Source of the DNA: Macrostomum lignano
Taxonomy: Eukaryota
Assembly: GCA_002269645.1 (NCBI GenBank)
Contig: NIVC01001363.1
Span: 1-64,000 of the forward strand
Direction: 5' to 3'
DNA: 64,000 bases
The notes under the pieces are model-generated. The model was not told the origin of the DNA. It did not search any database and saw only the letters and a list, made by a program, of their open reading frames with translations. A program made the position numbers and the translations under genes. Below, one piece after another: positions 9,001 through 58,766 of the stretch (its first letter is position 1; each line of letters opens with the position of its first letter).

Positions 9001-10505
9001 AACTCTGTGTCCTTGACTGTTTAACTCTGTGTCCTTGACTGTTTAACTCTGTGTCCTTGACTGTTTAACTCTGTGTCCTTGACTGTTTAACTCTGTGTCC
9101 TTGACTGTTTAACTCTGTGTCCTTGACTGTTTATCTCCGTGTCCTTGACTGTTTAACTCTGTGTCCTTGACTGTTTAACTCTGTGTCCTTGACTGTTTAA
9201 CTCCGTGTCCTTGACTGTTTAACTCCGTGTCCTTGACTGTTTAACTCTGTGTCCTTGACTGTTTAACTCTGTGTCCTTGACTGTTTAACTCTGTGTCCTT
9301 GACTGTTTAACTCTGTGTCCTTGACTGTTTAACTCTGTGTCCTTGACTGTTTAACTCTGTGTCCTTGACTGTTTATCTGTGTCCTTGACTGTTTAACTCT
9401 GTGTCCTTGACTGTTTAACTCTGTGTCCTTGACTGTTTAACTCTGTGTCCTTGACTGTTTAACTCTGTGTCCTTGACTGTTTAACTTGTGTCCTTGACTG
9501 TTTAACTCTGTGTCCTTGACTGTTTATCTGTGTCCTTGACTGTTTAACTCTGTGTCCTTGACTGTTTAACTCTGTGTCCTTGACTGTTTAACTCCGTGTC
9601 CTTGACTGTTTAACTCTGTGTCCTTGACTGTTTAACTCTGTGTCCTTGACTGTTTAACTCTGTGTCCTTGACTGTTTAACTCTGTGTCCTTGACTGTTTA
9701 ACTCCGTGTCCTTGACTGTTTAACTCCGTGTCCTTGACTGTTTAACTCTGTGTCCTTGACTGTTTAACTCTGTGTCCTTGACTGTTTAACTCTGTGTCCT
9801 TGACTGTTTAACTCTGTGTCCTTGACTGTTTAACTCTGTGTCCTTGACTGTTTAACTCCGTGTCCTTGACTGTTTAACTCTGTGTCCTTGACTGTTTAAC
9901 TCTGTGTCCTTGACTGTTTAACTCCGTGTCCTTGACTGTTTAACTCTGTGTCCTTGACTGTTTAACTTGTGTCCTTGACTGTTTAACTCCGTGTCCTTGA
10001 CTGTTTAACTCTGTGTCCTTGACTGTTTAACTCTTGTGTCCTTGACTGTTTAACTCCGTGTCCTTGACTGTTTAACTTTGTGTCCTTGACTGTTTAACTC
10101 CGTGTCCTTGACTGTTTAACTCCGTGTCCTTGACTGTTTAACTCTGTGTCCTTGACTGTTTAACTCTGTGTCCTTGACTGTTTAACTCCGTGTCCTTGAC
10201 TGTTTAACTTTGTGTCCTTGACTGTTTAACTCCGTGTCCTTGACTGTTTAACTCCGTGTCCTTGACTGTTTAACTCTGTGTCCTTGACTGTTTAACTCTG
10301 TGTCCTTGACTGTTTAACTCTGTGTCCTTGACTGTTTAACTCCGTGTCCTTGACTGTTTATCTCCGTGTCCTTGACTGTTTAACTCTGTGTCCTTGACTG
10401 TTTAACTCTGTGTCCTTGACTGTTTAACTCCGTGTCCTTGACTGTTTAACTCCGTGTCCTTGACTGTTTAACTCTGTGTCCTTGACTGTTTAACTTTGTG
10501 TCCTC
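1..10505. repeat. 22-bp tandem satellite, consensus AACTCTGTGTCCTTGACTGTTT, about 475 copies, runs off the window start
   Basis: Direct 22-nt periodicity (GTCCTTGA at 2401, 2423 and so on). Variants include CTCCGTGT, AACTTGTGT and TATCTCCGT. TAA occurs on both strands and 22 is not a multiple of 3, so every frame is closed. The array ends at ...CTTTGTGTCCTCAAAG. Confidence 0.99.
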
Positions 10506-15235: not shown

Positions 15236-15349
15236 AATAAATCCGCGGTACCACTGTTTGATCTGCTTCTTAGTAAAGTTGGTATTAGTCATTAGGAACT
15301 GCATGTCCTCCTTTGGCAGTTTTTTTCTTGGCCCGATGGCGTTTCCCAT
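15236..15349 (-). CDS. first coding exon of a neuronal calcium sensor (NCS/frequenin/neurocalcin family, NCS-2-like EF-hand protein)
   Basis: MGNAIGPRKKLPKEDMQFLMTNTNFTKKQIKQWYRGFI matches the NCS N-terminus (MG...KL.KED..FL..NT.F....IK.WY.GF). Phase-0 GTGAGT donor at 15235; a TTTTTCAG acceptor lies 24 nt upstream of the ATG. The EF-hand exons were not found. Confidence 0.9.
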
Positions 15350-15578
15350 TGCTTGGCTGCTCCGAGAGTTCAGCTGAAAAATAAATGCTGTTCGCTGTGC
15401 AGGAGGGGAGCTGCCGCACTGCCAGCCTTACCCCCCTATTTATACTGCACAGGCCTTTCTGGCACCCCGTGCGTCTCTCTCCCGAGAGAGGAGGAAGTGG
15501 CCGGTCTGTGGGTGCAAGGGAGGTCCCTGATCCCCTCGTCCAATCCTTCCAATAGTTTCCCATTTGATTGGGACTGGC

Positions 15579-25111: not shown

Positions 25112-25158
25112 TATCGCTAACGCTGAATGACGCCACCAGACGGACAAGACTGTGAGAA

Positions 25159-25455
25159 ATGCCGGCAGACTCGGAGCTCAGGCGGCAGCGGCTGTTTGAA
25201 GCCATTCGGGGCGGCGATCTTCGATCAGTTCGTCGACAGCTGATTGGCGCGGCGGCCAGACGGGATCTCGACAGTTTCATCGACGAGGACGGAGCGACAC
25301 CGCTGATGGCAGCTTGCGCGATCGGGCACCTGGCGATGGTGAAGCTGCTGGTCAGGCTGGGCGCCAGTGTCAGCACCTGCGACAGCATTGGCTGGGACCC
25401 GGTGACCACCGCCTGCTGGCATCATCAGCCGCGTGTGCTGGAGTTCCTGCTAGCG
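25159..25455 (+). CDS. first coding exon of an ankyrin-repeat protein
   Basis: LFEAIRGGDL...DEDGATPLMAACAIGHLAMVKLLVRLGASVSTCDSIGWDPVTTACWHHQPRVLEFLLA contains ankyrin consensus (G.TPL..A...GH...VK.L...GA). Phase-0 donor GCG|GTCAGG at 25456. Downstream exons were not identified. Confidence 0.85.
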
Positions 25456-25549
25456 GTCAGGCGGCTGCAGCACGCTCGGAACAGGCGCTACGCTTGAGGA
25501 CTGCGCGTTGGGACTTGGCTTGAATTTCACTACAGAGATGCACTTCAAG

Positions 25550-29866: not shown

Positions 29867-31338
29867 TCATTCGTTGTCCCCAGCGGGCCCGGCGCCGCCG
29901 CCATCCCCCGCAGGCAGCCCGGCCCACCTGTCGCAGGCCCGCTCGACCCGCTCAGTCGCCAGTTCGTCGACGACGCGCAAAGCTGGTGCGTCGGCCGCTA
30001 GCGGCGTCTTCAAAGCGACGTACTGGGCCAGCAGGGCGCGCATGGTCTCGAGGCGCTCCTCGCCCAGCAGACAGCGAAGCGGCTCGCGGTCCCCGGCGAG
30101 TCGCCTGCGAGCCTCCTCGGCGGCCGAGCAGAGCGGAGGCGGGGCGCTGGGGTAGCAGGGCAGCGGCTGGGCGCACAGCTGGAAGGCGCCGCGCAGCTGC
30201 AGGTAGCGCAGACAGTAAAGAGCGTCGCAGTGGCCCTCCTGGCAGAGCTGCTGGCGCAGTTCGGACAGGCGCTGCCACTGGGAGAGGCTCAGGCGGATTA
30301 GCGTGTTCACCTGTGTAAATTAAGTCATTAATCCAAATTCCCTTAATATTATTAAGTAAATAATAGTAGTTGATGTTAAAATACCAGGTTGTGATTTGAT
30401 CAACTTAGATACTCAAATTATAGAATTCTAAATATAATTCCCAGGTCCCCAATCTACATCCTTAACCTGGATCTAAATTCCAGATCCTCATGAAATTACA
30501 TTGAGGATCTGGGATTCTGATTGAGGATCAGGGATTTTGATTGGGGATCTGAATTTTGATTGAGGATCTGGGATTTTGATTGGGGATCTGAGATTTTGAT
30601 TGGGGATCTGGGATTTTGATTGGGGATCTGAGATTTTGATTGGGGATCTGGGATTTTGATTGGGGATCTGAGATTTTGATTGGGGATCTGAGATTTTGAT
30701 TGGGGATCTGGGATTTTGATTGGGGATCTGAGATTTTGATTGGGGATCTGGGATTTTGATTGGGGATCAGGCATTTTGATTGGATATCTGTGATTTGAGA
30801 CCCCAAGAGAGAATCCTACGCAATAAAATATCAGTGAAAACATTATAAAGAGCCGTCATATTGCCGGAGAACTCACCATTGGCGCCAGCTGTACATAGTA
30901 GGCGTACATCAGATACAGGGCACCAATTCGCAGCAGTGTAGAGTAGGGCGGCTGGCTATACAGAGCCAGGAGATGGAACAGGCATTGGGAAAAGTCCAGT
31001 AGCTCCTCCACGCTGCCGCGGCCTCGGCACAGTTCGGCCATGCCTCGTTGGGTAAACAGGGCGCCGAAAGCGGCGAATCTGGCCACGCCGGCCTCCGAGA
31101 AGGCGCGCAAAAAGCTGTCAATGTCTTCTTGAAGACCGGCAGCGGGATGTTGCTGTTGCTGCTCCTGCTGCAAAGATTGATCCACCCGCTCTCTCACCGC
31201 CTGTTTATCCGTGGCATGACGGCGCATTCGGCTAGCGGCCGTAATCAAGTCGTCCTCGTCGATAGAAGAGTCTGTGGAGGCGGCTGCATAGTCGGGATCG
31301 CTGCTTCCGCCAGTCGGGTCTGCGTCTGCTGATGCCAT
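29867..31338 (-). CDS. SNAPC1: snRNA-activating protein complex subunit 1 (SNAP43)-like; two exons, 31338-30877 and 30310-29867; 301 aa
   Basis: EDIDSFLRAF...RFAAFGALF...CRGR...ELLDF...PPYSTLLRIGALYLMYAYYVQ joined to LIRLSLSQWQRL...HCDALYCLRYL..RGAFQLCAQP follows the SNAPC1 N-terminal domain pattern. Phase-0 ATG|GTGAGT donor and TTTACACAG|GTG acceptor; TGA at 29869-29867. Confidence 0.85.
30500..30790. repeat. 21-bp minisatellite TTTTGATTGGGGATCTG(G/A)GA inside the SNAPC1-like intron
   Basis: Tandem periodicity. Confidence 0.9.
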
Positions 31339-31414
31339 CGCCAGAGCAGAGCCAAACTGGAAGGCGTATCAATACTGACTTTACATGCTGGCGTATGGAC
31401 AGCGTGCGTGTTGT

Positions 31415-36467: not shown

Positions 36468-37334
36468 ATGCAACACAAAACCTCGAACTTTCACTTCTCT
36501 CCCTCAGCTGCCCTCACCCAATTCAAATCTCACTGCTCCTCAGGCCGGCATGGCAACTCCCAGATCGCTCGAGTCTCTCCAGCAGCCGCAGACACCTGGG
36601 CTGGTCGAGAGGCGACCGCGAATTCCCGCTTGGAAACCGCTTGGCAACGGAGAGCCGTCTCCAGCTGCAGCCAGCCTGCGGCCTCTCAACCCCGCTACCC
36701 TCAACCTTTAAGTCCACCTGGAAGTCGAGCCTTCAAACCGGTTCGAAAACCCAGAGCTGGCCTTAGCAACCGCCGCAGACCCACCTACCTGTGGAGTCTC
36801 AACTCGACTGATTCTAAAAATAGCACAGCCGGCAGTGCAGGCGTCCTTGAACCTCACGCAAGGAGCAAGGACCCGAATAACTTTTGGTCTGTCCTTGCGG
36901 ACCCTCAGCCACTGAGGCCCATCCCTCTGTGTAATATCCCAAGCTTTATTTAGCGTTAATTTCAGTCTTAAAACAAGCGCTGCATCTTTTTAATGAATTC
37001 AACAAAATTTAGCAAAGATAATTGCATAGAAAATATTTACTAAGGCTTTGTACAAAGCAGCATATTGAGTTTATTTTATCCTACTTATATTAACTGAATG
37101 TAATTACAAGTGGGCAAAAATTACTGGTTGTTATACTTTTAAAGTCATGCAGCTGAGCAAGAAAGTTGCGGTTATTTGCTTTGAAAATTACAAGCAGACA
37201 ACTATAGAATCGTGTAACTCATGCAAAATTGAAGATGTAAGAAGCGATTCGGAAACAGTTTGGCCTTAAATGTGCAATCGAAATATTTTATGCGATGCGC
37301 CGATGGGAAATCAATTCAGAAGAGAGGCAAAAGC

Positions 37335-38154: not shown

Positions 38155-40095
38155 TCAGTGCAGAAAGGCGCATCGGCGGCCGAACCTGCAGTGCCCCGAG
38201 CTGAAGGCCAGGCAAGGCACGGTGCGGTACAGTGGGTGTCGAACCACCGACCTCAGCTCGGATTTTCCGTGGGCGAACCGGCACTTCGGACCGTAAGGAC
38301 AGCTGCCGCTCTCCTGCGATGGCGATTTCGGTGGGCCATGAGTATGACCGGGCTGAGGCTATCTATGACCCATGCCTGGCCTATGATGCCCATGACCTAT
38401 AATATCATGACCTATGCCTGGCCTATGATGCCCATGACCTAATATCTATGACCTATACCTGGCCTATGATGCCCATGACCTATAATATCATGACCTATGC
38501 CTGGCCTATGATGCCCATGACCTAATATCTAAGATCTATACCTGGCCTATGATGCCCATGACCTATAATATCATGACCTATGCCTGGCCTATGATGCCCA
38601 TGACCTAATATCTAAGATCTATACCTGGCCTATGATGCCCATGACCTAAAATCTATGACCTATACCTGGCCTATGATGCCCATGACCTATAATATCATGA
38701 CCTATGCCTGGCCTATGATGCCCATGACCTAATATCTATGACCTATACCTGGCCTATGATGCCCATGACCTATAATATCATGACCTATGCCTGGCCTATG
38801 ATGCCCATGACCTAATATCTAAGATCTATACCTGGCCTATGATGCCCATGACCTAATATCTATGACCTATACCTGGCCTATGATGCCCATGACCTATATT
38901 TGGCATTTGATGCCCATGACCTATAATATCGTGACCTATACTACCAATTACTTATAATACTTATGACCTATACTTTCTATGACTACTAGCCTCTCCGACG
39001 ACCAATCTATATGACCATCACTGTATTCCAACCCATTTATATGACCATCAATCCATATGAGCATCAATCTCGATGAGCACCCACTTCTATGACCATAAAT
39101 CTCAATAACCAGAAGCCACTATGACGATCAATATCTATGTCCATCACACCATACGACCACGAATTTTTATGACAATCCTGTGACCATCAGCCTCCATGAC
39201 CATCAATCCATGACTACGAATCGTCATGACCCATCAGTCTGTGGCTCTCAGACCCTATGACCATTAAACCCTATGCTTTACCAATGCATTTCTATAAGCC
39301 AAGATGCAGTCTACTTCGCACTCACAGAGTAGTTCAGGCAGAGTTCTGTTTTGTACTTCTCAGTGTCCAAGTCTCTTCTCCTTGAGCCCTCCTGTTCCTC
39401 CAGCAGCAGGTCGCTGACCAGCCGATCGATGAGGCAGAAAGTGTCTTCGTCCGTGATGACACTGGCTTGCTCTGAAATATGAAATTTGGATGATGATTGT
39501 TTGGGATTATTGGCTGAGTTCTAATGTGTTGGGTATGTTGTAAACATGTGTTGTGACTCCAGACTTGATGTGTGCTGAATGTGTTCTGAATGTGTTCTGA
39601 ATGTGTGCTGAATGTGTACTGAATGTGTACTGAATGTGTGCTGAATGTGTACTGAATGTGTGCTGAATGTGTACTGAATGTGTGCTGAATGTGTACTGAA
39701 TGTGTGCTGAATGTGTACTGAATGTGTGCTGAATGTGTACTGCATGTGTTCTGAATGTGTGCTGAATGTGTGCTGAATGTGTGCTGAATGTGTTCTGAAT
39801 GTGTGCTGAATGTGTACTGAATGTGTACTGAATGTGTGCTGAATGTGTGCTGAATGTGTACTAAATGTGTGCTGAATGTGTGCTGAATGTGTGCTGAATG
39901 TGTGCTGAATGTGTTCTGAATGTGTGCTGAATGTGTTCTGAATGCGTACTGAATCTGTAAAAAATGGGTGCTAAATGTGCAATAAATTCGATGAGCTGTC
40001 AATCAAAAATCCAGGTGCAGCAGAATTTGCTTACCTTCGCTCAGTCGCAGCTCTCCATAGGCGGTCAATCCGGAACTGGAACTGCAGCTGCTCAT
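38155..40095 (-). CDS. TIS11/ZFP36-family tandem CCCH zinc-finger protein, left-arm copy; exons 40095-40035, 39471-39326, 38313-38155; 121 aa
   Basis: The spliced product ends [12 protein letters not shown]|[52 protein letters not shown]. It has the KYKTEL lead-in, CX8CX5CX3H, an 18-aa linker and CX7CX5CX3H. GT-AG sites have matching phases (1, 0). Confidence 0.95.
38350..38950. repeat. about 40-bp ATGACC-rich minisatellite in TIS11-like intron 2 (mirror at about 58070-58560)
   Basis: Unit TATACCTGGCCTATGATGCCCATGACCTAATATCTATGACC, decaying into a degenerate ATGACC tract up to about 39290. Confidence 0.92.
39570..39950. repeat. 10-bp minisatellite CTGAATGTGT in TIS11-like intron 1 (mirror at 56703-57390)
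   Basis: Tandem periodicity; about 38 units versus about 68. Confidence 0.95.
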
Positions 40096-40184
40096 GGCTG
40101 GCTATCAAAATTGCTGAGCTGTGGTGAAAAGTTGAGTAGTGAGTTCGGATGATTTTCAGTTTCAAGCCGCACAGATCCTCAGTC

Positions 40185-40230
40185 CGCTTTTATCGCCTTT
40201 GAAGGGAGGGGACGCCTCCTGAGCCAATGG
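40185..40230 (-). promoter_or_regulatory. putative core promoter of the left TIS11-like gene
   Basis: CCAAT at 40224 and GATAAAA (minus strand, 40194-40188) lie about 95-130 nt upstream of the ATG. Both are conserved in the right arm and in the spacer copy. Confidence 0.4.
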
Positions 40231-40354
40231 GAGAAGCATGGAGAACCTCCGGGCCCCTTGAACCCCTCCCTCACCTTAGCGAATGGGAATCGCCCAGTTT
40301 CGAGCAAGCTTTGGGGTGAATAAAACTTGTAAAGAAACTGGTGGCTGAGTGAAA

Positions 40355-41075
40355 ATCCGCCCCTCTGACACTCCTCAATCCGCCCCTCTGACACTCCTCA
40401 ATCCGCCTCTCTGACACTCCTCAATCCGCCCCTCTGACACTCCTCAATCCGCCCCTCTGACACTCCTCAATCCGCCCCTCTGACACTCCTCAATCCGCCC
40501 CTCCGACACTCCCTAATCCGCCCCTCTGACACTCCTCAATCCGCCACTCTGACACTCCTCAATCCGCCACTCCGACACTCCCCAATCCACCCCTCTGACA
40601 CTCCTCAATCCGCCCCTCTGACACTCCCCAATCCACCCCTCTGACACTCCTCAATCCGCCCCTCTGACACTCCCCAATCCACCCCTCTGACACTCCTCAA
40701 TCCGCCCCTCTGACACTCCTCAATCCGCCCCTCTGACACTCCTCAATCCGCCCCTCTGACACTCCTCAATCCGCCCCTCTGACACTCCTCAATCCGCCCC
40801 TCTGACACTCCCCAATCCGCCCCTCTGACACTCCTCAATCCGCCCCTCTGACACTCCTCAATCCGCCCCTCTGACACTCCTCAATCCGCCCCTCTGACAC
40901 TCCTCAATCCGCCCCTATGACACTCCCCAATCCGCCCCTCTGACACTCCTCAATCCGCCCCTCTGACACTCCTCAATCCGCCCCTATGACACTCCCCAAT
41001 CCGCCCCTCTGACACTCCTCAATCCGCCCCTCTGACACTCCTCAATCCGCCACTCCGACACTCCCCAATCCGCCC
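40355..41075. repeat. 23-bp minisatellite (minus-strand unit GAGGGGCGGATTG(A/G)GGAGTGTCA) between the divergent TIS11-like and nanos genes
   Basis: About 31 units here, about 23 at 55570-56100 and about 8 at 50842-51033. Confidence 0.95.
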
Positions 41076-42364: not shown

Positions 42365-42735
42365 CCCTGGCCCTCTCGCTTTCCCTCTCCTCTCCGCCCC
42401 TCTCCGCCCCTCTCCACCCCTCTCCGCCGCTCTCCGCTCCTCTCCGCCCCTCTCCACCCCTCTCCGCCCCTCTCCGCTCCTCTCCGCCTCTCTCCGCTCC
42501 TCTCCGCCCTTCTCCGCTCCTCTCCGCCCCTCTCCGCTCCTCTCCGCCCCTCTCCGCTCCTCTCCGCCCCTCTCCGCCCTTCTCCGCCCCTCTCCTCTCC
42601 TCTCCGCCCCTCTCCGGCCCTCTCAGGCCCTCTCCGGCCCTCTATGCCTCTCTCCACCTCTCTCCGTCCCTCTCCGCCCCTCGCTGTCCCTCTCCGGCCC
42701 ACTCCGCCTCTCTCCGCCCCTCTCCGCCCCTCACC
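42365..42735. repeat. 11-bp CTCTCCGCCCC-type minisatellite (mirror at 53585-54150)
   Basis: Tandem periodicity; contains repeated CCGCCCC GC-boxes. Confidence 0.92.
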
Positions 42736-43471
42736 GCGCTTTAAACAACTCCAATCTCCTCTCCTCTCTCTCAATCTTCCTTTCGCTCCTCAGGCCGGCA
42801 TTGCAACTCCCAGATCGCTCGAGTCGCTCCAGCAGCCGCAGCCACCTGGGCTGGCCGAGAGGCGACCGCGAATTCCCGCTTGGAAACCGCTTGGCAACGG
42901 AGAGCCGTCTCCAGCTGCAGCCAGCCTGCGGCCTCTCAGCTCCGTCACCCCCTTCCCAATCCGAGTCTCGTTTGGTTGCTGGGGCCATGGGAGTTGGGAG
43001 ACGGCCTGGAGACGCGTCAGTCTGAGATGGCCAGTCGAGTCCACCTGTGTAAAGCTGAGTTCTCGGCATCTCAACATTTCAAGATGGAATTGTATAAATG
43101 TATGCTAAAAATCAGGATTCTTTTTAAGTTTCAAGCTGCATAAATACTGAACTCCTGCTCAAGAAACTCAATTGTCAGTTGTGAAGAAAATATTCAGCTT
43201 TAAAATGAGAGAAAGACTGTGAAAACTGTGAAAACTTTGAACTGGCCTCGACTGTCACTGCCATGCAGTATTCTGTCTCCACCCTCTGTCTCCACCCCCA
43301 GTGAAAGCGCGTCAGCCAATAGCAGGCCGCCTCACACCCACAGGTGAAGATGATTGTCCGCATGGAGTATATTAGAGTGAATAATTTCTCAGATCTCAGG
43401 CAGACTAATTCCAATTCTAGGCTAACTGAAATCCGCAACCTACAGCTTCACCCAGCTTCTCTGCCTCATCA

Positions 43472-44629
43472 ATGCAGCCGTCAAGGAATCGCAGCTTCAT
43501 TGGCCTGAGGTGAGTTCTGAAAGCAGGTTTGAGTACAGGTGTCAGATTTATGCATATAAACTGACAATTAATCGCATCACTTCCTATTTTCTTTGTGTAT
43601 TTTTTGCGTGTGTTGCGTAGTTTTACCACTTTTAAATATAAGCCCGGCCCCTTCTCTATCTCACTTCTCTCCTATCCTATCTCTCTCTCCTATCTCGCTC
43701 TTCCAATTTTACGACCGATTAAAACTGCCACTGTCCGCCTGTTGCTAAATTTAGCTCTCTGTTAGCCCATTCTTTGTTATTTGTCCCACTAGTAATGGGA
43801 CAACAGGGCATGCTTTTGAGACCTACTTAGCTCAGCAGTGTATAACCTCCCTGCCGTCCTGATCAAGCCTAAATATAAAACTTCCCTGCACTCTCATCAC
43901 AGCCCGCGGGTAGCTGGAGAGGAACCGCTTCCCATTGTGAAGCACATTCTGCAGCTGCAGAATCAGTACCTGCAGTACCTGCGGCAGCAGACTGACACCC
44001 AGCAGCAGCTCCAGGTCGAGACCCAGCAGCAGCACGAGCTCGAGACCCAGCAGCAACTCCAGCTCGAGACCCAGCAGCAGCTCAAGCTCGAGACCCAGCA
44101 GCAGCTCCAGCTCGAGACCCAGCAGCAGCTCCAGCTCGAGACCCAGCAGCAGCTCCAGCTCGAGACCCAGCAGCAGCTCCAGCTCGAGACCCAGCAGCAG
44201 CACCATTTCGAGACCCAGCAGCAACTCCAGCTCGAGACCCAGCAGCAGCTCAAGCTCGAGACCCAGCAGCAGCTCCAGCTCGAGACCCAGCAGCAGCTCC
44301 AGCTCGAGACCCAGCAGCAGCTCCAGCTCCAGTTCCAGCCCGCTGCCGCCCCGCTGCCCAACGCCGCCCTGCAGCGCGCGGTGCTCGCCAGGAACGCCAG
44401 CCGGCCGCGCCGCCCCGTCTTCTGCGTCTTCTGCCGCAAGAACGGCGAGCCGGAGGCCTTCAGCAGCGGCCACACCCTGAAGGACGGCAACGGCAGCGTC
44501 GCCTGCCCGGTGCTCAGCCGCTTCACCTGCCCGCTGTGCGGCGCCACCGGCGGCAGCGCCCACACCGTGAAATACTGCCCGCTGGGCACCGGCCACGGCT
44601 GCGGCCGCAGGAAACTGACAGGACAGTGA
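43472..44629 (+). CDS. nanos: Nanos-family (CCHC)2 zinc-finger protein, left-arm copy; exons 43472-43509 and 43903-44629; 254 aa with 14 (LQLETQQQ) repeats
   Basis: [53 protein letters not shown] is the Nanos domain. ATG at 43472 with a phase-2 AG|GTGAGT donor fits the phase of the CATCACAG|C acceptor (765 nt in total). An upstream acceptor at 43445 leaves room for a further 5' exon. Confidence 0.92.
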
Positions 44630-45357
44630 CAGCCCTGCACTCTCAGCACCTCTTAACACCTCACTCTTAACCTGCACTCTTAACACCTCAGCTCTGCATG
44701 CACTCTCAACTGTAATGCAAACCAACTATACGTAAAATTTGCAATGCTTAATTTTGTTTTCTGCAACCAACCTTTGCTTTAAAATTAAAATTAATAAATA
44801 ATAAAGGAAAAATAAATATAATAAGTAAGTCAATAAGAGCAATTATTGTATGTCTGCAATCGGTCAATTTGCCACAAACGCGATTGTATAGTTCGCCTCT
44901 TGTTTTGTCTGAAAGTAATTTTAGGACATGGGTTAATGAGTATACCGGTGTTCATCTTCCTGAGTTCGAATTCCGAAGTTCGAGTTCTTGATGGCAGACA
45001 GACTCATTCGTTAGACTCTAACGTATTGCGCTATTCGAGATATTCGGCTTTCAATTTAATCAAAGAATCTAAAAATAAAGGTACATATGCGCTTCAGAAA
45101 GCAGGAACTTCTATTAATAACCATTTGGGATATACACTCGAATTCTTTCAGTTGAACTGAAAACTGCAGTAGAGAGAAACACAAGAGCATCGGGAATCTG
45201 TGCGGTGATGGGGAATCTCGGGGAGGATCTGTCTGAATCATCGCCACCAACCGCTGATAGAAATCTCTGGCAACCACGAAATATTGAGCCGTAAACGTTT
45301 GCTGGGAATAGAAATATTGAAGCCCATTATAACTTGCTCTATACCAGATACTAGACT

Positions 45358-45789: not shown

Positions 45790-46639
45790 ATTCTATAGCA
45801 TCTGTGCTCTATGACTAATCTCATTTCCCTTTCCCACAAAACCTGCACGCTTTTAAGTAACGAGAATGAAAAAAAAACTATAATTAGGATTTTGGTTTCA
45901 TGTAACAAGTTTACCATAAGCACTATTCACTCTGACACAACAGTACACTGACACAACAGCACACTGACACAACAACACACTGACACATACATAACTCGCA
46001 ACAGAAATATCCTCCAGTTCTGTCCTGTGCATTAACATGGCTAACTATTCTAGAGAAAAGAAATTTTTAGAAACTGCGGTTGCTAAGCTAAGCCTTTTCG
46101 AACCGATTTGAGGCTGGGGTGGCGGAGCTGAGAGGCCTCTGGCTAGCTGCAGCTGGGGAAAGCTCTCCGTTGCCAGGCGGTTTCCAATCGGCAACTTTGG
46201 TTGCCTCTCGGCCCAGGTGGCTGCGTGAATGCTGTGTTAGGCTCCTCAATTTCTATTGGTTAAAATTTGCTGACGCGCAGTCCCAGCTGTTCCCATTGGC
46301 TGAGAAAGCTTGCAATGACCGCCGAGCCCCCCCCCCGAGGCCTTCGATGGGACTATAAAATGTTTATATTATTCTAATCTAACCGAATTCAAGCAGCACA
46401 AAACTGAAACTCCGTATTTTACAATCGTTAGTAAAATAAATTTAATTTCGATTAAATAAAATAATCTGCGTAAGAGCCATCACCGGCTGAAGCGCTCAAT
46501 ACTTACTTAGCTCGTATCAAGAAGAAGAATCTAACCGAATTCAAGCCAACCTCGATTTTAACAGTTAACTGGAGCATTGTCAGCCAATATGGCAAGTTAT
46601 ATATCCTGACTGTCTTTAGGCTTCCTGACCCTGACATAC

Positions 46640-48188: not shown

Positions 48189-48947
48189 TCCACCTCTCCA
48201 AGCACTCCATCAACCGGAGCAGGCAGCCCCTGTATAGGCTCAGCTTCCAGTGCCGCAGTTTCAGCCGGACTGAAATTTAAAACAGAGTTGTGCCGGAACT
48301 TCGAAGTGAGTCCTACACAGCTCTGCTGCTCTTGCTGCTTTATTTTCGTAAAACCGCCATCTGACACCCCACCCACAACCTGCCCCTATCGTCTCTGACA
48401 CCCCCACAATCTGCCCCTATCCTCTCTAACACCCCCAATCTGCCCCTAATCCTCTCTGATAGGGTCCCTTGACAAGTCCCCATCCGCCCCCCGACAAGTC
48501 CCCATCCGCCCCTGACAAGTCCCCATCCGCCCCTGACAAGTCCCCATCCGCCCCTGACAAGTCCCCATCCGCCCCTGACAAGTCACCATCCGCCCCTGAC
48601 AAGTCACCATCCGCCCCTGACAAGTCACCATCCGCCCCTGACAAGTCACCATCCGCCCCTGACAAGTCACCAGCCGCCCCTGACAAGTCACCATCCGCCC
48701 CTGACAAGTCACCATCCGCCCCTGACAAGTCACCATCCGCCCCTGACAAGTCACCATCTGCATCCACCCCGCACTCCCGCAGCTCAGCGGCAGCTGCCCT
48801 TTCGCCAACCGGTGCCAATTCGCCCACGGCCCCGAGGAGCTGCGAGGCCGGCCCGACCGGCACTGGCTGTACAAAACGGAGCCCTGCCGCGCTTTCCATG
48901 GCGAAGGACTCTGCCGGTACGGCGGCCGCTGTCATTTTCTACACTGA
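48189..48947 (+). CDS. third, divergent TIS11/ZFP36-family tandem CCCH gene; exons 48189-48305 and 48783-48947; start exon unresolved
   Basis: ...LKFKTELCRNFE|LSGSCPFANRCQFAHGPEELRGRPDRHWLYKTEPCRAFHGEGLCRYGGRCHFLH* has two CX8CX5CX3H fingers. TTTCAG acceptor, GTGAGT donor and CGCAG acceptor; the intron falls at the same codon position as in the arm copies. Confidence 0.92.
48470..48760. repeat. 21-bp minisatellite GCCCCTGACAAGTCACCATCC in the intron of the spacer TIS11-like gene
   Basis: Tandem periodicity; source of the spurious APDKSPS ORF. Confidence 0.94.
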
Positions 48948-49481
48948 TTGACTTATGTGCATAGTGTATGTATGTATGTTTGTATTTATGTGTATATACG
49001 TCCATATGCTTAAAAATACAGATTTTACAGACTTATTTAATCAAAAGTCTGTACTCATGTTTCTCTATACTCGTGCTTTGAAATCTGTGACAATGAATTC
49101 ACAGATGGGTGGACTTTTTTATAAACCTTTCTGTAAAGTCTCCGTCTCATTCTCCGCTCCTCTCTGATCCCCTTCGCCCGCTCCGCCACTCTCCGCCAAT
49201 CTCCGCCCCTCTCTGCCCCTCTCCGTTCCTCTCCACCCCTCTCCGCCCCTCTCAGCCACTCTCCGCCCCTCTCCGCCCCTCTCCGCCCCTCTCAGCCACT
49301 CTCCGCCCCTCTCCGCTCCTCTCCGCTACTCTCCGCCCCTCTCCGCCCTCCCCGTCCTCTTTGCTTCTCTCCAGAAAAAATCAGAAGGGTGGGGACGGGA
49401 GAGGAGAGTCGGAGAGAGTGACAGGCTGGGAGAGAGTGACAGGCCGGGAGAGAGCGACTTTTTTTATTGTTTTAGACAATT

Positions 49482-49815
49482 AGTTTTTTATTGTCTGTTT
49501 AACAGCAATTATTTATGCTTCCTTGACCTTATTCGCTGAGGAGCGAAGATTTGCGCTCAGCTACGATATGAGCTGGAGACCATACGTACCCTCGTATATC
49601 GTTTGAGTCCAACTCGGTTGATTGCCAAGCGGAATTCTAATTGCGGCTCTGATGCGGCTTTTTCTCACCGCGGTGACCCAGCTGTGAGCTGCAGTCAGCA
49701 AAGCCGACCAGCCGAAGCGGTGAAGTCCGATCTGCAGCAGCTTGAGACACCTGGGATGCTCAGGTTGGCTCAGCTCTCCAAGTGTTCGTAACAGCCCAGT
49801 TCGAGTTGTGCTGAT
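49482..49815. repeat. 334-bp direct repeat, copy 1 (copy 2 at 51854-52187)
   Basis: Apparently identical text at an offset of 2372 (the ORF track shows the same peptides at both sites). Confidence 0.95.
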
Positions 49816-50054
49816 CAAACACTAAACTACTAAAGTTTAGTTGAGTTGGTTTTGCTGCACTTTGGTCTTTGTTGGAATTGGAAAACTAACAGCTGTGTGA
49901 ATTAGCTTTTTGGGTTCATGTCATTCAAATTGAAGTTCAGGTCATTCAGATTGAGGCTCAGGTCATTCAGATTGAGTTTCAGGTCATTCAGATTGAGGCT
50001 CAGGTCATTCAGATTGAGGCTCAGGTCATTCAGATTGAGTTTCAGGTCATTCAG

Positions 50055-51248
50055 AGGGGTGGAGAGGGCCGGAGAGGGGCGGAGAGGGCCGGAGACGGGC
50101 GGAGAGGGGCGGAGAGGGCCGGAGACGGGCGGAGAGGGGCGGAGAGGGCCGGAGAGGGCCGAAGAGGGGCGGAGAGTAGAGAAGAGGGGTGGAGAGGGGC
50201 GGAGAGGGACGGAGAGGGCCGAAGAGGGGCGGAGAGTAGAGAAGAGGGGTGGAGAGGGCCGGAGAGGGCCGGAGAGGGTCGGAGAGGGCCGGAGAGAAGA
50301 GGAGAGGGGCGGAGAGGTAGAGGTTGAGGTAGAAAGGCGAGGGAAAGCGAGAGGGCGAGGGAAAGGAGATGGAGAGGTAGAGTCAGAAGAGATTTTCAGT
50401 TTCTTGATACTTTGAAGTGAGCTGGCTGCTCTCCAAACATCGGGACTCCATGATTTTGAACCTGAATCTGAATAACCTGAACCTCAATCTGAATTACCTG
50501 AATCCCAATCTGAATGACTTAAACCTCAATTTGAATGATCTAACCCTCAATCTGAATGACCTGAACCTCAATCTAAATGACTGAACCCCAATCTGAATGA
50601 CCTGAACCCCAATCTGAATGACCTGAACCTCAATCTGAATGACCTGAGCCTCAATCTGAATGACCTGAGCCTCAATCTCAATGACCTGAACCTCAAGTAT
50701 GACCTGGAGGATCAGTGCGAGTTCCCCGCACGAAATGCTGGCCGCCCACGCTTTGCCTGCTGCTTCCCTGCACGGCATCTCAAAGTCTGGTGGGATTTCC
50801 CGAGCCGCCCTTTTGTTTCCCGGACTCGAATTCGCAAACTGGGGCGGATTGAGGAGTGTCAGAGGGGCGGATTGAGGATTGTCAGAGGGGCGGATTGAGG
50901 ATTGTCAGAGGGGCGGATTGGGGAGTGTCAGGGAGGCGGATTGAGGAGTGTCGGAGAGGCGGATTAAGGAGTGTCAGAGGGGCGGATTGAGGAGTGTCAG
51001 AGGGGCGGATTGAGGAGTGTCAGAGGGGCGGATTTTCACTCAGCCACCAGTTTCTATACAAGATTTATTCACCCCAAAGCTTGCTCGAAACTGGGCGATA
51101 CCCATTCGCTAAGGTGAGGGATTGGTTCAAGGGGCCCGGAGGTTCTCCTTGCTTCCCCCATTGGCTCAGGAGGCGCCCCCTCCCTTCAAAGGCGATAAAA
51201 GCGGCCTGAGGATCTGTGCGGATTGGAACTGAAAATCATCCGAACTCC
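50055..51248. repeat. condensed partial duplicate of the intergenic region, in right-arm orientation, without coding exons
   Basis: Successive blocks match about 53900-54350, 55440-55620 and 56300-56517; it stops about 45 nt before the TIS11-like ATG. Confidence 0.88.
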
Positions 51249-51249
51249 G

Positions 51250-51685
51250 AGAGAGTGACAGGCCGGGAGAGAGTGACAGGCTGGGAGAGAGAGACAGGCC
51301 GGGAGAGAGTGACAGGCGGGGAGAGAGTGACTGGCCGGGAGAGAGTGACAGGTCGGGAGAGAGTGACAGGCTGGGAGAGAGTGACAGGCTGGGAGAGAGT
51401 GACAGGCCGGGAGAGATTGACAGGCGGGGAGAGAGTGACAGGCCAGGAGAGAGTGACAGGCCGGGAGAGAGTGACAGGTCGGGAGAGAGTGACAGGTCGG
51501 GAGAGAGTGACAGGCCGGGAGAGAGTGACAGGCCGGGAGAGAGTGACAGGTCGGGAGAGAGTGACAGGTCGGGAGAGAGTGACAGGCCGGGAGAGAGTGA
51601 CAGGTCGGGAGAGAGTGACAGGTCGGGAGAGATTGACAGGCTGGGAGAGAGTGACAGGCCAGGAGAGAGTGACAGGCCGGGAGAG
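51250..51685. repeat. 20-bp minisatellite GGGAGAGAGTGACAGG(C/T)C-type
   Basis: Tandem periodicity; a short related stretch lies at about 49410-49455. Confidence 0.92.
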
Positions 51686-51853
51686 AGGAAAATCGCGGAG
51701 GCGCGATCAGGAAATGTAAGGTTTTTTGGAAGCAGTTCTTGAGGTGCTTTGTGAAGCTGCTGTGTTAAACGACTTATAGACTTCGGTCGGGGTCAGTCAG
51801 TCAGTCAGTCAGTCAGGCTGGGCCTCAAAGCAGGCTTCACAGCAGGGTTTGTC

Positions 51854-52588: not shown

Positions 52589-53518
52589 TCACTGTCCTGT
52601 CAGTTTCCTGCGGCCGCAGCCGTGGCCGGTGCCCAGCGGGCAGTATTTCACGGTGTGGGCGCTGTCGCCAGTGGCGCCGCACAGCGGGCAGGTGAAGCGG
52701 CTGAGCACGGGGCAGACGACGCTGCCGTTGCCGTCCTTCAGGGTGTGGCCGCTGCTGAAGGCCTCCGGCTCGCCGTTCTTGCGGCAGAAGACGCAGAAGA
52801 CGGGGCGGCGCGGCCGGCTGGCGTTCCTGGCGAGCACCGCGCGCTGCAGGGCGGCGCGGCCGGCTGGCGTTCCTGGCGAGCACCGCGCGCTGCAGGCCGG
52901 CGTTGGGCAGCGGGGCGGCAGCGGGCTGGAACTGGAGCTGGTGCTGCTGCTGGGTCTCGAGCTGGAGCTGCTGCTGGGTCTCGAGCTGGTGCTGCTGCTG
53001 GGTCTCGAGCTGGAGCTGCTGCTGGGTCTCGAGCTGGTGCTGCTGCTGGGTCTCGAGCTGGAGCTGCTGCTGGGTCTCGAGCTGGAGCTGCTGCTGGGTC
53101 TCGAGCTGGAGCTGCTGCTGGGTCTCGAGCTGGTGCTGCTGCTGGGTCTCGAGCTGGAGCTGCTGCTGGGTCTCGAGCTGGTGCTGCTGCTGGGTCTCGA
53201 GCTGGAGCTGCTGCTGGGTTTCGAGCTGGAACTGCTGCTGGGTCTTGAGCTGGTGCTGCTGCTGGGTCTCGAGCTGGAGCTGCTGCTGGGTCTCGAGCTG
53301 GTGCTGCTGCTGGGTCTCGAGCTGGAGCTGCTGCTGGGTCTCGAGCTGGAGCTGCTGCTGGGTCTCGAGCTGGAGCGGCTGCTGGGTGTCAGTCTGCTGC
53401 CGCAGGTACTACAGGTACTGATTTTGCAGCTGCAGGAGTTCAGTGTTCGCGGTCGCCTCTCGGCCAGCCCAGGTGGCTGCGGCTGCTGGAGCGACTCGAG
53501 CGATCTGGGAGTTGCCAT
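52589..53518 (-). CDS. nanos: rearranged nanos copy: intronless 309-aa ORF with a Ser-rich N-terminus and an intact Nanos zinc finger (function uncertain, possibly a pseudogene)
   Basis: ATG at 53518, then about 19 (SSSSSSRP) units, then CVFCRKNGE...[28 protein letters not shown]. The ancestral Gln frame has a TAG (53412-53410) and a 46-bp duplication (52805-52896). Confidence 0.65.
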
Positions 53519-56500: not shown

Positions 56501-56560
56501 AAATCACCCGAACTCACTACTCAACTTTTCACCACAGCTCAGCAATTTTGATAGCCAGCC

Positions 56561-58766
56561 ATGAGCAGCTGCAGTTCCAGTTCCGGATTGACCACCTATG
56601 GAGAGCTGCGACTGAGCGAAGGTAAGCAAATTCTGCTGCACCTGGATTTTTGATTGACAGCTCATTGAGTTTATTGCACATTTAGCACCCATTTATTACA
56701 GATTCAGTACGCATTCAGCACACATTCAGCACACATTCAGAACACATTCAGCACACATTCAGAACACATTCAGCACACATTCAGCACGCATTCAGAACAC
56801 ATTCAGCACACATTCAGCACACATTCAGCACACATTCAGAACACATCTACACACATTCAGAACACATCTACACACATTCAGAACACATTCAGCACACATT
56901 CAGCACACATTCAGCACACATTCAGCACACATTCAGCACACATTCAGAACACATTCAGTACACATTCAGTACACATTCAGAACACATTCAGAACACATCT
57001 ACACACATTCAGCACACATTCAGCACACATTCAGCACACATTCAGAACACATTCAGCACACATTCAGAACACATTCAGCACACATTCAGTACACATTCAG
57101 CACACATTCAGTACACATTCAGAACACATTCAGTACACATTCAGTACACATTCAGCACACATTCAGCACACATTCAGCACACATTCAGTACACATTCAGT
57201 ACACATTCAGCACACATTCAGAACACATCTACACACATTCAGCACACATTCAGAACACATCTACACACATTCAATACACATTCAGCACACATTCAGCACA
57301 CATTCAGCACACATTCAGTACACATTCAGTACACATTCAGTACACATTCAGTACGCATTCAGCACACATTCAGTACACATTCAGAACACATAAAGTCTGG
57401 AGTCACAAGACATGTTTACAACATACCCAACACAGTAGAACTCAGCCAATAATTCCAAACAATCATCATCCAAATTTCATATTTCAGAGCAAGCCAGTGT
57501 CATCACGGACGAAGACACTTTCTGCCTCATCGACAGGCTGGTCGGCGACCTGCTGCTGGAGGAACAGGAGGGCTCAAGGAGAAGAGACTTGGACAATGAG
57601 AAGTACAAAACAGAGCTCTGCCTGAACTACTCTGTGAGTGCGAAGTAGACTGCATCTTGGCTTATAGAAATGCATTGGTAAAGCATAGGGTTTAATGGTC
57701 ATAGGGTCTGAGAGCCACAGACTGATGGGTCATGACGATTCGTAGTCATGGATTGATGGTCATGGAGGCTGATGGTCACAGGATTGTCATAAAAATTCGT
57801 GGTCGTATGGTGTGATGGACATAGATATTGATCGTCATAGTGGCTTCTGGTTATTGAGATATTTGGTCATAGAAGTGGGTGCTCATCGAGGTTGATGCTC
57901 ATTGCTCGAGGTTGATGGATTGATGGTCATATAGATGGGTTGGAATACAGTGATGGTTATATAGATGGGTTGCAATACAGTGATGGTCATATAGATTGGT
58001 CGTCGGAGAGGCTAGTAGTCATAGAAAGTATAGGTCATATGTATTATAAGCCATTGGTAGTATAGGTCACGATATTATAGGTCATGGACATCAGAGGCCA
58101 AATATAGGTCATGGGCATTATAGGCCAGGTATAGGTCATAGATATTAGGTCATGGGCATTATAGGCCAGGTATAGGTCATAAATATTAGGTCATGGGCAT
58201 CATAGGCCAGGTATAGGTCATAGATATTAGGTCATGGGCATCATAGGCAAGGTATAGGTCATAGTTATTAGGTCATGGGCATCATAGGCCAGGCATAGGT
58301 CATGATATTATATTATAGGTCATGGCCATCATAGGCCAGGTATAGGTCATAGATATTAGGTCATGGGCATCATAGGCCAGGCATAGGTCATGATATTATA
58401 GGTCATGGGCATCATAGACCAGGTATAGGTCATAGATATTAGGTCATGGGCATCATAGGCCAGGTATAGGTCATAGATATTAGGTCATGGGCATCATAGG
58501 CCAGGTATAGGTCATAGATATTAGGTCATGGGCATCATAGGCCAGGTATAGGTCATAGATAGCCTCAGCCCGGTCATACTCATGGCCCACCGAAATCGCC
58601 ATCGCAGGAGAGCGGCAGCTGTCCTTACGGTCCGAAGTGCCGGTTCGCCCACGGCAAATCCGAGCTGAGGTCGGTGGTTCGACACCCACTGTACCGCACC
58701 GTGCCTTGCCTGGCCTTCAGCTCGGGGCACTGCAGGTTCGGCCGCCGATGCGCCTTTCTGCACTGA
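56561..58766 (+). CDS. TIS11/ZFP36-family tandem CCCH protein, right-arm copy; exons 56561-56621, 57488-57633, 58608-58766; 121 aa
   Basis: Same structure as the left copy with splice sites intact. Seven substitutions in 366 nt by eye (4 synonymous, 3 replacements, all outside the fingers). Confidence 0.95.

What the first reader, a model, noticed from the sequence alone, without database searches (positions are those of the whole stretch)
38155..40095. Minimal finger-only TIS11-like proteins that stop right at the last zinc-binding His
Seen: all three CCCH genes have TGA immediately after the final His, and the arm copies are only 121 aa. Finger 2 of the arm copies is CX7CX5CX3H with a LYRTVP lead-in, while the aromatic stacking residues are retained. 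Known: canonical TTP/TIS11 proteins have a C-terminal CNOT1-binding tail, and the isolated tandem finger binds AU-rich elements and can act dominant-negatively. Inference: these are RNA readers with no recognisable effector tail. They may be competitors or stabilisers, or specificity partners that borrow the effector function of the neighbouring Nanos (by analogy with Pumilio-Nanos), possibly with altered finger-2 specificity.
Basis: partly seen in the sequence, partly recalled or inferred. Interest (0 to 1): 0.72.

Follow-up and report, generated by a model that had tools for sequence, protein, structure and literature searches.

The report
Tail-less mini TIS11-type RNA-binding genes
Two near-identical genes in the arms of a DNA palindrome, plus an older diverged copy between them, encode very small tristetraprolin/TIS11-type RNA-binding proteins that really do end at the last zinc-binding histidine; this is an unusual variant of a well-known family, but how it acts and whether it works with the neighbouring Nanos genes is untested.

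Summary
Window 38155-40095 (- strand) is a three-exon gene with GT-AG introns and compatible phases. It encodes 121 aa: a 58-aa N-terminal part and a TTP/TIS11-type tandem CCCH zinc finger (TZF). TGA follows the last His directly. A mirror copy lies at 56561-58766 (+), and a diverged third copy at 48189-48947 (+) stops at the same codon.

Finger 2 of the arm copies is CX7CX5CX3H with lead-in LYRTVP, and the aromatic positions are kept. The best solved-structure matches are TIS11d (1RGO) and TTP (1M9O). AlphaFold models both fingers with confidence.

Arm and central copies are old paralogs: 58% identical, synonymous sites saturated, dN/dS about 0.18. They share rare residues and the stop position, so the missing tail is an old, selected feature rather than fresh damage.

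"Finger-only" is overstated, because 58 residues precede the fingers, including a low-confidence predicted helix. No NOT1-binding motif is present.

The Nanos-partner idea has no support. One Nanos copy has no ATG, the other is frame-shifted, and neither shows a NOT1-interacting motif.

My best reading is an occupancy-type AU-rich-element binder. The source organism and expression are unknown.

The parts
40187..40228 (-). Putative core promoter of the left-arm gene: inverted CCAAT box (ATTGG, 40228..40224) and TATA-like box (GATAAAAG, 40194..40187), about 95 nt upstream of the ATG. There is no upstream ATG in the presumed 5' UTR.
   Evidence: Read directly from the sequence. The segment is kept in three copies: 40141-40545, 56299-56515 and 50843-51247. 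Function is inferred only.
40035..40095 (-). Left-arm TZF gene, exon 1. ATG at 40095..40093; encodes [20 protein letters not shown] plus 1 nt; donor G|GTAAGC.
   Evidence: In-frame stops lie just upstream of the ATG.
39326..39471 (-). Left-arm TZF gene, exon 2 (146 nt). It encodes the acidic, Leu-rich N-terminal segment (…[22 protein letters not shown]…) and the first half of finger 1 ([11 protein letters not shown]). The intron splits finger 1 after C-x4.
   Evidence: Acceptor TTTCAG|AG, donor TCT|GTGAGT.
38155..38313 (-). Left-arm TZF gene, exon 3. It encodes the rest of finger 1, the 18-aa linker and finger 2 (CX7CX5CX3H, 38214..38158). The TGA at 38157..38155 follows the last His directly.
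56561..58766 (+). Right-arm mirror copy of the gene (exons 56561-56621, 57488-57633, 58608-58766). It also encodes 121 aa. There are 7 nucleotide differences from the left copy: 3 non-synonymous, all N-terminal (A12T, S40G, T57N), and 4 synonymous.
48189..48305 (+). Central paralog, exon holding the S/T/P-rich segment and the first half of finger 1 (…GLKFKTELCRNFE|GTGAGT). The exon that would carry the start codon was not found.
48783..48947 (+). Central paralog, last exon (acceptor CCGCAG|CTC). It holds the rest of finger 1, a 19-aa linker and a canonical CX8CX5CX3H finger 2 with lead-in LYKTEP. TGA follows the last His directly.
43838..44629 (+). Left-arm Nanos ORF, divergent from the TZF gene and about 3.7 kb away. 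The Nanos zinc-finger domain is at 44423-44578. The N-terminal part is a 24-nt coding minisatellite (LETQQQLQ)n. There is no ATG on this strand in 43850-44640.
52589..53518 (-). Right-arm Nanos ORF (zinc-finger domain 52640-52795). It has a 46-nt tandem duplication before the domain and a TAG in the left-type frame. The ORF stays open only in another frame of the minisatellite.
50843..51247 (+). Third, truncated copy of the arm promoter and 5' UTR segment. It ends about 46 nt before the position where the ATG would be and is followed by an 18-nt minisatellite.

Best explanation
These are real, long-maintained, lineage-specific paralogs of the tristetraprolin/TIS11 (ZFP36) family whose reading frame ends at the last zinc ligand.

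Shown:
- Both arm copies have an intact three-exon gene.
- Finger 1 and the 18-residue linker are canonical, and all eight zinc ligands are present.
- The fold is predicted with confidence and matches the TIS11d-RNA complex best.
- Arm and central paralogs are as far from each other as from ZFP36 proteins of other animals, yet they share rare residues and the same stop codon. Amino-acid change between them is about five times slower than silent change.

Inferred:
- The protein binds single-stranded U/A-rich RNA (UAUUUAU-like) through the two fingers. Finger 2 of the arm copies probably reads a changed or relaxed half-site.
- There is no C-terminal region and no NOT1-binding motif, so the protein most likely acts by occupancy. 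It would sit on AU-rich elements and either shield them from tail-bearing family members and from deadenylation, or block them sterically. It would not recruit CCR4-NOT through a tail.
- Any effector contact would have to come from the 58-residue N-terminal part.
- The pairing with Nanos in an ampliconic palindrome suggests germline or early-embryo use. That is context only.
For: - Gene model, phases and splice sites.
- Stop directly after His in three copies whose 3' flanks are unrelated.
- Pfam zf-CCCH, two stretches per protein.
- PDB sequence matches: 9y10, TIS11d 1RGO (E = 9e-21) and TTP 1M9O.
- AlphaFold with 40 sequences: per-10-residue block means 93/95/91 over residues 61-90 (finger 1 and start of linker) and 90/89/86 over 101-121 (finger 2). 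Foldseek top hit is 1RGO, E = 1.7e-6, 55% identity; POS-1 is second.
- Arm versus central TZF: 38/65 identical, pS 0.70 (saturated), pN 0.29, dN/dS about 0.18.
- Rare residues shared by arm and central copies: L97 (1 of 37 homologs), P102 (3), A105 (1), R112 (2), L120 (4).
- No CNBD-like motif, whereas 10 homologs have RLP[IV]F at or near the C-terminus.
- Among the 97 TTP-type proteins in the 150 best representatives, no tail is shorter than 3 aa, the median tail is 132 aa, and the shortest protein is 143 aa.
- An isolated TZF inhibits Ccr4-Not deadenylation in vitro (Zfs1 TZF, PMC6340701).
- The CNBD is a conserved C-terminal helix that binds NOT1, and the TTP IDRs carry the effector contacts (PMC12350847).
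Against: - There are no transcripts, so expression, the 3' end and splicing are unverified.
- No AATAAA or ATTAAA lies within 1 kb downstream of the arm stop codons, and none within 750 nt for the central copy.
- The left/right arm comparison gives no selection signal: 3 non-synonymous versus 4 synonymous changes, exon divergence 1.9% against 2.8% in unique non-coding DNA.
- The central copy has no identifiable start exon.
- dS is saturated, so the dN/dS value is rough.
- The N-terminal part could hold an effector motif, which would make 'occupancy only' wrong.
- RNA binding by a CX7 finger 2 with the LYRTVP lead-in is untested.
Confidence: 0.5

Rival explanations
1. Mini-adaptor. The effector has not been lost but sits in front of the fingers. 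The acidic, Leu-rich segment (residues about 28-57, …[22 protein letters not shown]…) would form an amphipathic helix that docks on CCR4-NOT or another decay or repression factor. The 121-aa protein would then be a minimal but complete mRNA-decay adaptor, arranged like S. pombe Zfs1 (effector region N-terminal, TZF at the C-terminal end).
For: - A helix is predicted at 28-44 and 31-57.
- Zfs1 has its RNA-binding domain at the C-terminal end and recruits Ccr4-Not through its N-terminal low-complexity region (PMC6340701).
- The N-terminal IDR of TTP also contacts CCR4-NOT (PMC12350847).
- Decapod proteins of 674-870 aa have the TZF only 3-4 aa from the C-terminus.
Against: - The helix pLDDT is only about 50-58.
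- The segment does not match the RLP[IV]F NOT1-binding signature.
- Homologs show no comparable N-terminal motif.
- One of the three left/right amino-acid differences puts a Gly inside the helix (S40G). N-terminal changes run 3 non-synonymous to 2 synonymous.
- The known exon of the central paralog has no such segment.
Confidence: 0.2
2. Decaying ampliconic copies. The three TZF genes and the two Nanos ORFs would be non-functional passengers of an unstable, minisatellite-ridden palindrome, and the intact frames would be a leftover kept alike by arm-to-arm gene conversion.
For: - 56% of the window is tandem arrays.
- The Nanos copies look compromised.
- A truncated promoter-only copy exists.
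- The central copy lacks a start exon.
- There is no nearby poly(A) signal.
- The two arms show no clear selective signal.
Against: - Arm and central paralogs are saturated at silent sites, yet they keep all 16 zinc ligands, the aromatic residues, the splice sites and the same stop, with dN/dS about 0.18. A pseudogene of that age would be riddled with stops and frameshifts.
Confidence: 0.15
3. Hidden tail. The TGA would be bypassed in some transcripts by splicing from a donor upstream of the stop into a downstream exon that encodes a conventional effector tail.
For: - It cannot be excluded without RNA data.
- The lack of a close poly(A) signal leaves room for long 3' regions.
Against: - No GT lies between finger 2's third Cys and the stop. 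The only donor-like site in the arm exon (CAG|GTTCGG) lies inside finger 2 and would destroy it (read from the sequence).
- The 3' flanks of arm and central copies are unrelated, a 25/26-nt minisatellite versus AT-rich unique DNA, yet the stop is at the same codon.
Confidence: 0.07
4. Nanos partner. The tail-less TZF protein would supply RNA specificity and the neighbouring Nanos protein the CCR4-NOT contact, as with Pumilio-Nanos. The converse is also possible: the TZF protein could regulate nanos mRNA, as POS-1 does for nos-2 in C. elegans.
For: - The TZF gene and Nanos ORF are co-duplicated head to head about 3.7 kb apart in both arms.
- TIS11-like CCCH proteins and nanos are discussed together in the C. 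elegans germline literature (PMC9686995, seen). That POS-1 controls nos-2 translation is my own knowledge.
Against: - Nanos L has no ATG.
- Nanos R is frame-shifted and reads the repeat in another frame.
- No NOT1-interacting motif was found.
- No UAUUUAU lies in the sense strand downstream of either Nanos ORF.
- No interaction data exist.
Confidence: 0.05

Closest known systems
Tristetraprolin / TIS11 (ZFP36, ZFP36L1, ZFP36L2) family; TIS11d TZF-ARE structure 1RGO and TTP TZF 1M9O
   Same: - Two CCCH fingers, each with an (R/K)YKTEL-type lead-in.
- An 18-residue linker in the arm copies.
- Conserved aromatic residues.
- 55% identity to the TIS11d TZF, which is also the best fold match.
   Different: - No residues follow the last His, so there is no C-terminal IDR and no NOT1-binding domain.
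- The protein is 121 aa, against 143-1212 aa for the 97 TTP-type representatives (among the best 150) whose last TZF I could delimit.
- Arm finger 2 is CX7 with lead-in LYRTVP and Leu instead of Arg/Lys after the first Cys of both fingers.
- An intron splits finger 1. That vertebrate ZFP36 genes have their single intron far upstream of the TZF is my own knowledge and was not tested.
S. pombe Zfs1
   Same: A TTP-family protein whose TZF is at the C-terminal end. Its effector contacts lie in the N-terminal region, and its isolated TZF inhibits deadenylation (PMC6340701).
   Different: Zfs1 is 404 aa with an N-terminal disordered region of about 320 aa that holds several Ccr4-Not-binding stretches. 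Here only 58 residues precede the fingers.
Uncharacterised decapod proteins (Macrobrachium rosenbergii / M. nipponense, P0040 cluster)
   Same: An 18-linker TTP-type TZF placed 3 aa from the C-terminus (…CQFLHDLE).
   Different: They are 742-754 aa (the three named Macrobrachium members) with further CCCH fingers and a very long N-terminal part. They still have a 3-aa tail and a canonical CX8 finger 2.
C. elegans POS-1 (6NZL) and related germline CCCH proteins (MEX-5, OMA-1)
   Same: Small germline TIS11-like TZF proteins without a TTP-type NOT1-binding tail. POS-1 is the second-best fold hit.
   Different: Sequence similarity is much lower than to TIS11d (E = 1e-14 versus 1e-20). POS-1 has regions on both sides of the fingers.

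Membership tests
TTP/TIS11 (ZFP36) tandem zinc finger family | Two CX8CX5CX3H fingers | tested here: inconclusive
   Finger 1 is CX8CX5CX3H in all copies. Finger 2 is CX8 in the central copy but CX7 in both arm copies. None of the 18-linker TZFs among the 150 best representatives has CX7 in finger 2. AlphaFold still models arm finger 2 with block-mean pLDDT 86-90.
TTP/TIS11 (ZFP36) tandem zinc finger family | Exactly 18 residues between the His of finger 1 and the first Cys of finger 2 | tested here: met
   The arm copies have 18 (residues 85-102). The central copy has 19.
TTP/TIS11 (ZFP36) tandem zinc finger family | (R/K)YKTEL lead-in before each finger | tested here: inconclusive
   Finger 1 has KYKTEL (arm) or KFKTEL (central). 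Finger 2 has LYRTVP (arm) or LYKTEP (central). L97 occurs in 1 of 37 homologs, V101 in 0 and P102 in 3.
TTP/TIS11 (ZFP36) tandem zinc finger family | Significant sequence and fold similarity to solved TTP-family TZF domains | tested here: met
   By sequence, 1RGO E = 9e-21 and 1M9O E = 4.5e-20. By fold, Foldseek places 1RGO top, E = 1.7e-6 and TM 0.61 normalised on the target.
TTP/TIS11 (ZFP36) tandem zinc finger family | C-terminal NOT1-binding domain (RLP[IV]F…-type amphipathic helix) | tested here: not met
   The protein ends at the last His. No [RK]x0-1[LIM]P[IVL]F occurs anywhere in the arm or central sequences, while 10 homologs in the fetched set have it. This feature is common in the family but not universal; S. 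pombe Zfs1 is treated as a family member and works through its N-terminal region.
TTP/TIS11 (ZFP36) tandem zinc finger family | High-affinity binding to UUAUUUAUU-type AU-rich elements | not testable with these tools
   This needs EMSA, fluorescence anisotropy or RNA Bind-n-Seq with recombinant protein.
Nanos (the neighbouring gene, considered as partner) | Two CCHC zinc fingers (Pfam zf-nanos) | tested here: met
   PF05741 E = 1.8e-24. Drosophila 5KL1 and zebrafish 3ALR both match at E about 1e-19.
Nanos (the neighbouring gene, considered as partner) | Intact translatable ORF with an N-terminal effector / NOT1-interacting motif | tested here: not met
   The left copy has no ATG. The right copy has a 46-nt duplication and an in-frame TAG relative to the left copy. 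No FxxWxDYL-like motif lies near either ORF.

The most novel reading that the evidence does not exclude
The window would be part of a germline-limited or sex-limited ampliconic palindrome. Its amplified unit would be a head-to-head pair of RNA regulators, a repeat-expanded Nanos and a minimal tail-less TIS11-type reader, working together as a two-part repressor. The TZF protein would give AU-rich-element specificity with a re-tuned second finger, and Nanos or the N-terminal helix would give the effector contact. This would be a new Pumilio-independent way of aiming Nanos.
Probability: 0.06. Interest if true: 0.8.

Novelty: new variant of a known kind. Interest (0 to 1): 0.42.

Why it matters
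TTP-family proteins are textbook adaptors that join an RNA-reading domain to CCR4-NOT through disordered tails. Until now this has been studied mostly with engineered truncations.

The arm copies also offer a natural variant of finger 2 (CX7, LYRTVP lead-in, no basic residue after Cys1) for studying how TZF specificity is set.

The setting, a 26-kb palindrome that co-amplifies this gene with Nanos, recalls the ampliconic germline gene arrays of sex chromosomes and germline-restricted chromosomes. It would gain weight if the source organism and chromosome were known.

Tried and rejected
- **Source organism.** Not identified. The word-index searches gave only distant hits: TZF at most 59% identity, Nanos 57% to frog nanos2, and nothing for the SNAPC1-like exon. 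Exact look-ups of three window ORFs found nothing. A metagenome scan for the 22-nt satellite found nothing. There are no Rfam or tRNA hits and no telomere repeats. CpG o/e of 0.75 is not diagnostic. The nearest named TZF relatives come from scattered taxa, namely a teleost ZFP36, an annelid, a scorpion and an amoebozoan, so the domain is too conserved to place the source.
- **Relocated NOT1-binding motif.** From memory, the N-terminal [12 protein letters not shown] looked a little like the TTP C-terminal motif. A consensus drawn from the fetched homologs (RLP[IV]F) does not match it, so I dropped it as a membership claim.
- **Start exon of the central copy.** No ATG exon with a plausible donor lies in the 3.5 kb upstream.
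- **Arm exon 1 as a degenerate duplicate of the finger-1 exon.** The alignment score is within the range of shuffles.
- **Auto-regulatory AU-rich elements.** One UAUUUAU lies 36 nt after the central stop and none lies after the arm stops. The excess over shuffles across the window comes from an AT-rich block.
- **Poly(A) signals.** None is nearby.
- **Bacterial promoter/terminator scan.** Irrelevant for this eukaryotic DNA.
- **Literature.** The key phylogenetic reviews of the family (PMC3976581, PMC5376222) are not held. No paper linking germline-specific chromosomes, Nanos and CCCH genes was found.
- **P0001.** This 125-aa transcript looked like a tail-less relative, but its last residues are a translated sequencing adapter (a recognition from memory), so its end is an artefact.
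Full report
**What is in the window**

The window is eukaryotic DNA of unusual repetitiveness. Tandem Repeats Finder arrays with score of at least 200 cover 56% of it, including 10.5 kb of a 22-nt satellite at the left end.

Between about 35.4 and 61.8 kb lies a large palindrome. Its arms match at 94-100% outside differences in minisatellite copy number. A six-frame scan for CCCH fingers finds three TIS11-like genes, one in each arm and one in the spacer. A scan for Nanos fingers finds one Nanos ORF in each arm.

**The observation checks out in every particular**

The left-arm gene lies on the minus strand. Its parts are:
- Exon 1, 40095..40035: ATG, donor G|GTAAGC, phase 1.
- Exon 2, 39471..39326: acceptor TTTCAG|AG, donor TCT|GTGAGT.
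- Exon 3, 38313..38155: acceptor TCGCAG|GAGAGC.

These join into 366 nt, giving 121 codons and TGA. The finding's coordinates are exactly ATG to stop.

The protein is [121 protein letters not shown].

The right arm has the same three exons (56561-56621, 57488-57633, 58608-58766) with the same splice sites.

The central gene has an exon at 48189-48305 (…GLKFKTELCRNFE|GTGAGT) and a last exon at 48783-48947, which ends …CRYGGRCHFLH*. In all three the DNA reads CAC TGA.

Arm finger 2 is CX7CX5CX3H with lead-in LYRTVP. The central finger 2 is CX8 with lead-in LYKTEP. An intron splits finger 1 after C-x4 in all copies.

**Family assignment**

- Pfam finds two zf-CCCH stretches in each protein.
- The best solved relatives are 9y10, TIS11d (1RGO, E = 9e-21) and TTP (1M9O). 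The alignments run from the KYKTEL lead-in to the last His and show a one-residue gap in arm finger 2.
- AlphaFold with a 10-sequence alignment gave a poor model.
- With 40 sequences, AlphaFold modelled both fingers with confidence: block means 91-95 over residues 61-90 and 86-90 over 101-121. Residues 1-60 stayed low, with a helix at 31-57 at pLDDT about 50-58.
- Foldseek puts the TIS11d-ARE complex first (E = 1.7e-6, 55% identity) and POS-1 second.

**How unusual the proteins are**

The exhaustive HMMER search found 10,111 homologs, none closer than 62% identity. Among the 150 best representatives, 97 carry a TTP-type TZF. For these:
- The shortest tail after the last His is 3 aa. It belongs to four clusters of 674-870 aa; the one cluster that carries names is from the decapod Macrobrachium.
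- The median tail is 132 aa.
- The shortest protein is 143 aa.
- None of the 18-linker TZFs has CX7 in finger 2.

A column-by-column comparison with 37 canonical homologs shows two things. The invariant positions are all kept: zinc ligands, K61, T62, E63, R94, T100, G114, R116 and F119. The arm copies nevertheless carry residues that are rare or absent elsewhere:
- L66 and L104 in place of Arg/Lys after the first Cys of each finger.
- R81 in place of Gln.
- L97, V101 and P102 in the second lead-in.
- F113 in place of Tyr, and A118.

Five rare states are shared by arm and central copies (L97, P102, A105, R112, L120), as is the stop position. This marks them as sister paralogs of one subfamily.

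**Age and selection**

Arm and central TZFs are only 38/65 identical, no closer than either is to ZFP36 proteins of other animals. Over 63 aligned codons, pS is 0.70 (saturated) and pN is 0.29, so dN/dS is about 0.18. The duplication is therefore old and the fingers have been under purifying selection since.

The stop directly after His is shared even though the 3' flanks are unrelated. The arms have a 25/26-nt minisatellite starting 28 nt after the stop, and the central copy has AT-rich unique DNA. So the missing tail is an ancestral, tolerated or selected feature of this subfamily, not recent damage.

The two arm copies differ at 7 of 363 coding positions. Three are non-synonymous, all in the N-terminal part, and four are synonymous, two of them in the fingers. 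Exon divergence (1.9%) is not clearly lower than in unique introns and promoter (about 2.8%), so this comparison says nothing about selection.

"Finger-only" is too strong, because 58 of the 121 residues precede the fingers.

The gene has a plausible promoter: an inverted CCAAT box at 40228-40224 and a TATA-like box at 40194-40187, with no upstream ATG in the presumed 5' UTR.

No NOT1-binding signature is present. Ten of the fetched homologs have RLP[IV]F at or near the C-terminus, and the window proteins have nothing like it. The N-terminal helix does not match it, and homologs have no comparable N-terminal motif.

The Nanos idea finds no support:
- The left Nanos ORF (43838-44629) has no ATG on its strand anywhere in 43850-44640.
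- The right one (52589-53518) has a 46-nt tandem duplication and a TAG in the left-type frame. It stays open only by reading the 24-nt coding minisatellite in another frame.
- No FxxWxDYL-type motif lies near either.

**Mechanism**

Literature read here establishes three points. [quoted passage not shown] TTP uses both of its disordered regions for several CCR4-NOT contacts (PMC12350847). S. pombe Zfs1 has its TZF at the C-terminal end and its effector contacts in a long N-terminal region, and the Zfs1 TZF alone inhibits deadenylation (PMC6340701).

On that basis my best reading (confidence 0.5) is a genuine U/A-rich RNA binder that acts by occupancy. The rivals are:
- The N-terminal helix is a short effector motif (0.2).
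- The copies are decaying passengers of the palindrome (0.15).
- A hidden tail is added by splicing (0.07).
- The protein is a Nanos partner or a regulator of nanos mRNA (0.05).

**Weak points**

- There are no transcripts.
- No poly(A) signal lies within 1 kb of the arm stops.
- The central copy lacks a recognisable start exon.
- The organism could not be identified despite many attempts.

**Verdict**

It is a new variant of a known kind: a tail-less, 121-aa TTP-family protein with a modified second finger, duplicated in a palindrome next to Nanos. Its interest is moderate. That would rise if the locus proved to be germline- or sex-limited and expressed.

Noticed in passing
window 35431-61817: A palindrome of about 26 kb. 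Its arms (about 35.4-44.4 kb and 52.8-61.8 kb) are 94-100% alike apart from minisatellite copy number. Each arm carries a TZF gene and a divergently oriented Nanos ORF. The symmetry centre (about 48.3-48.8 kb) falls within the central TZF gene, in a non-palindromic spacer of about 8 kb.
   Followed up: partly
window 43838-44629 (+) and 52589-53518 (-): The two Nanos ORFs have a 24-nt coding minisatellite in front of the zinc-finger domain and read it in different frames, (LETQQQLQ)n versus (SSRPSSSS)n. The right copy has a 46-nt tandem duplication that resets the frame, plus a TAG in the left-type frame. The left copy has no ATG on its strand in 43850-44640 but has a TATAAAA at about 43872.
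   Followed up: partly
window 49812-51247 (+): A third, truncated copy of the arm segment that lies between Nanos and the TZF gene, promoter and 5' UTR included. It stops about 46 nt short of where the ATG would be and runs into an 18-nt minisatellite (51249-51687).
   Followed up: no
window 29870-31368 (-): Two exons of a SNAPC1-like gene (Pfam PF09808, E = 8e-15 and 1e-6). No homolog turned up in the word-index protein search, so the gene is very divergent.
   Followed up: partly
window 25156-25494 (+): An exon-like ORF encoding ankyrin repeats (Pfam Ank_2 / Ank_4, E about 1e-11).
   Followed up: no
window about 15311-15427 (-): A likely first exon of a neuronal-calcium-sensor-type gene: [39 protein letters not shown]. 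It has an N-terminal MG start and matches NCS-1 and neurocalcin (E = 2e-4).
   Followed up: no
window 1-10504: 10.5 kb of a 22-nt satellite (AACTCTGTGTCCTTGACTGTTT, about 480 copies, 97% matches). In all, 56% of the window is tandem arrays with periods of 4-26 nt and higher-order units.
   Followed up: partly
window 36550-36711, 42644-43108, 46116-46225, 53400-53518, 60829-60941: A dispersed repeat whose translation begins [14 protein letters not shown]… occurs at least five times. One copy supplies the only ATG of the right-arm Nanos ORF.
   Followed up: no
window 48983-48989 (+): A UAUUUAU heptamer, the core TTP-family binding site, lies 36 nt downstream of the central gene's stop, in AT-rich (TATG)n-like DNA. 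No such site follows the arm genes.
   Followed up: partly
window 40035-40095 (-) versus 48250-48305 (+): Arm exon 1 (…[16 protein letters not shown]|G) loosely resembles the end of the central finger-1 exon (…AAVSAGLKFKTELCRNFE|G), as if it were a degenerate duplicate of that exon. The DNA alignment score is not above the best shuffle.
   Followed up: yes
protein P0001 (eukprot transcript): The apparent short tail CLLYTSDAADE after its second finger looks like a translated Nextera adapter (recognised from memory, not checked with a tool). This 'near tail-less' relative is therefore probably an assembly artefact.
   Followed up: yes
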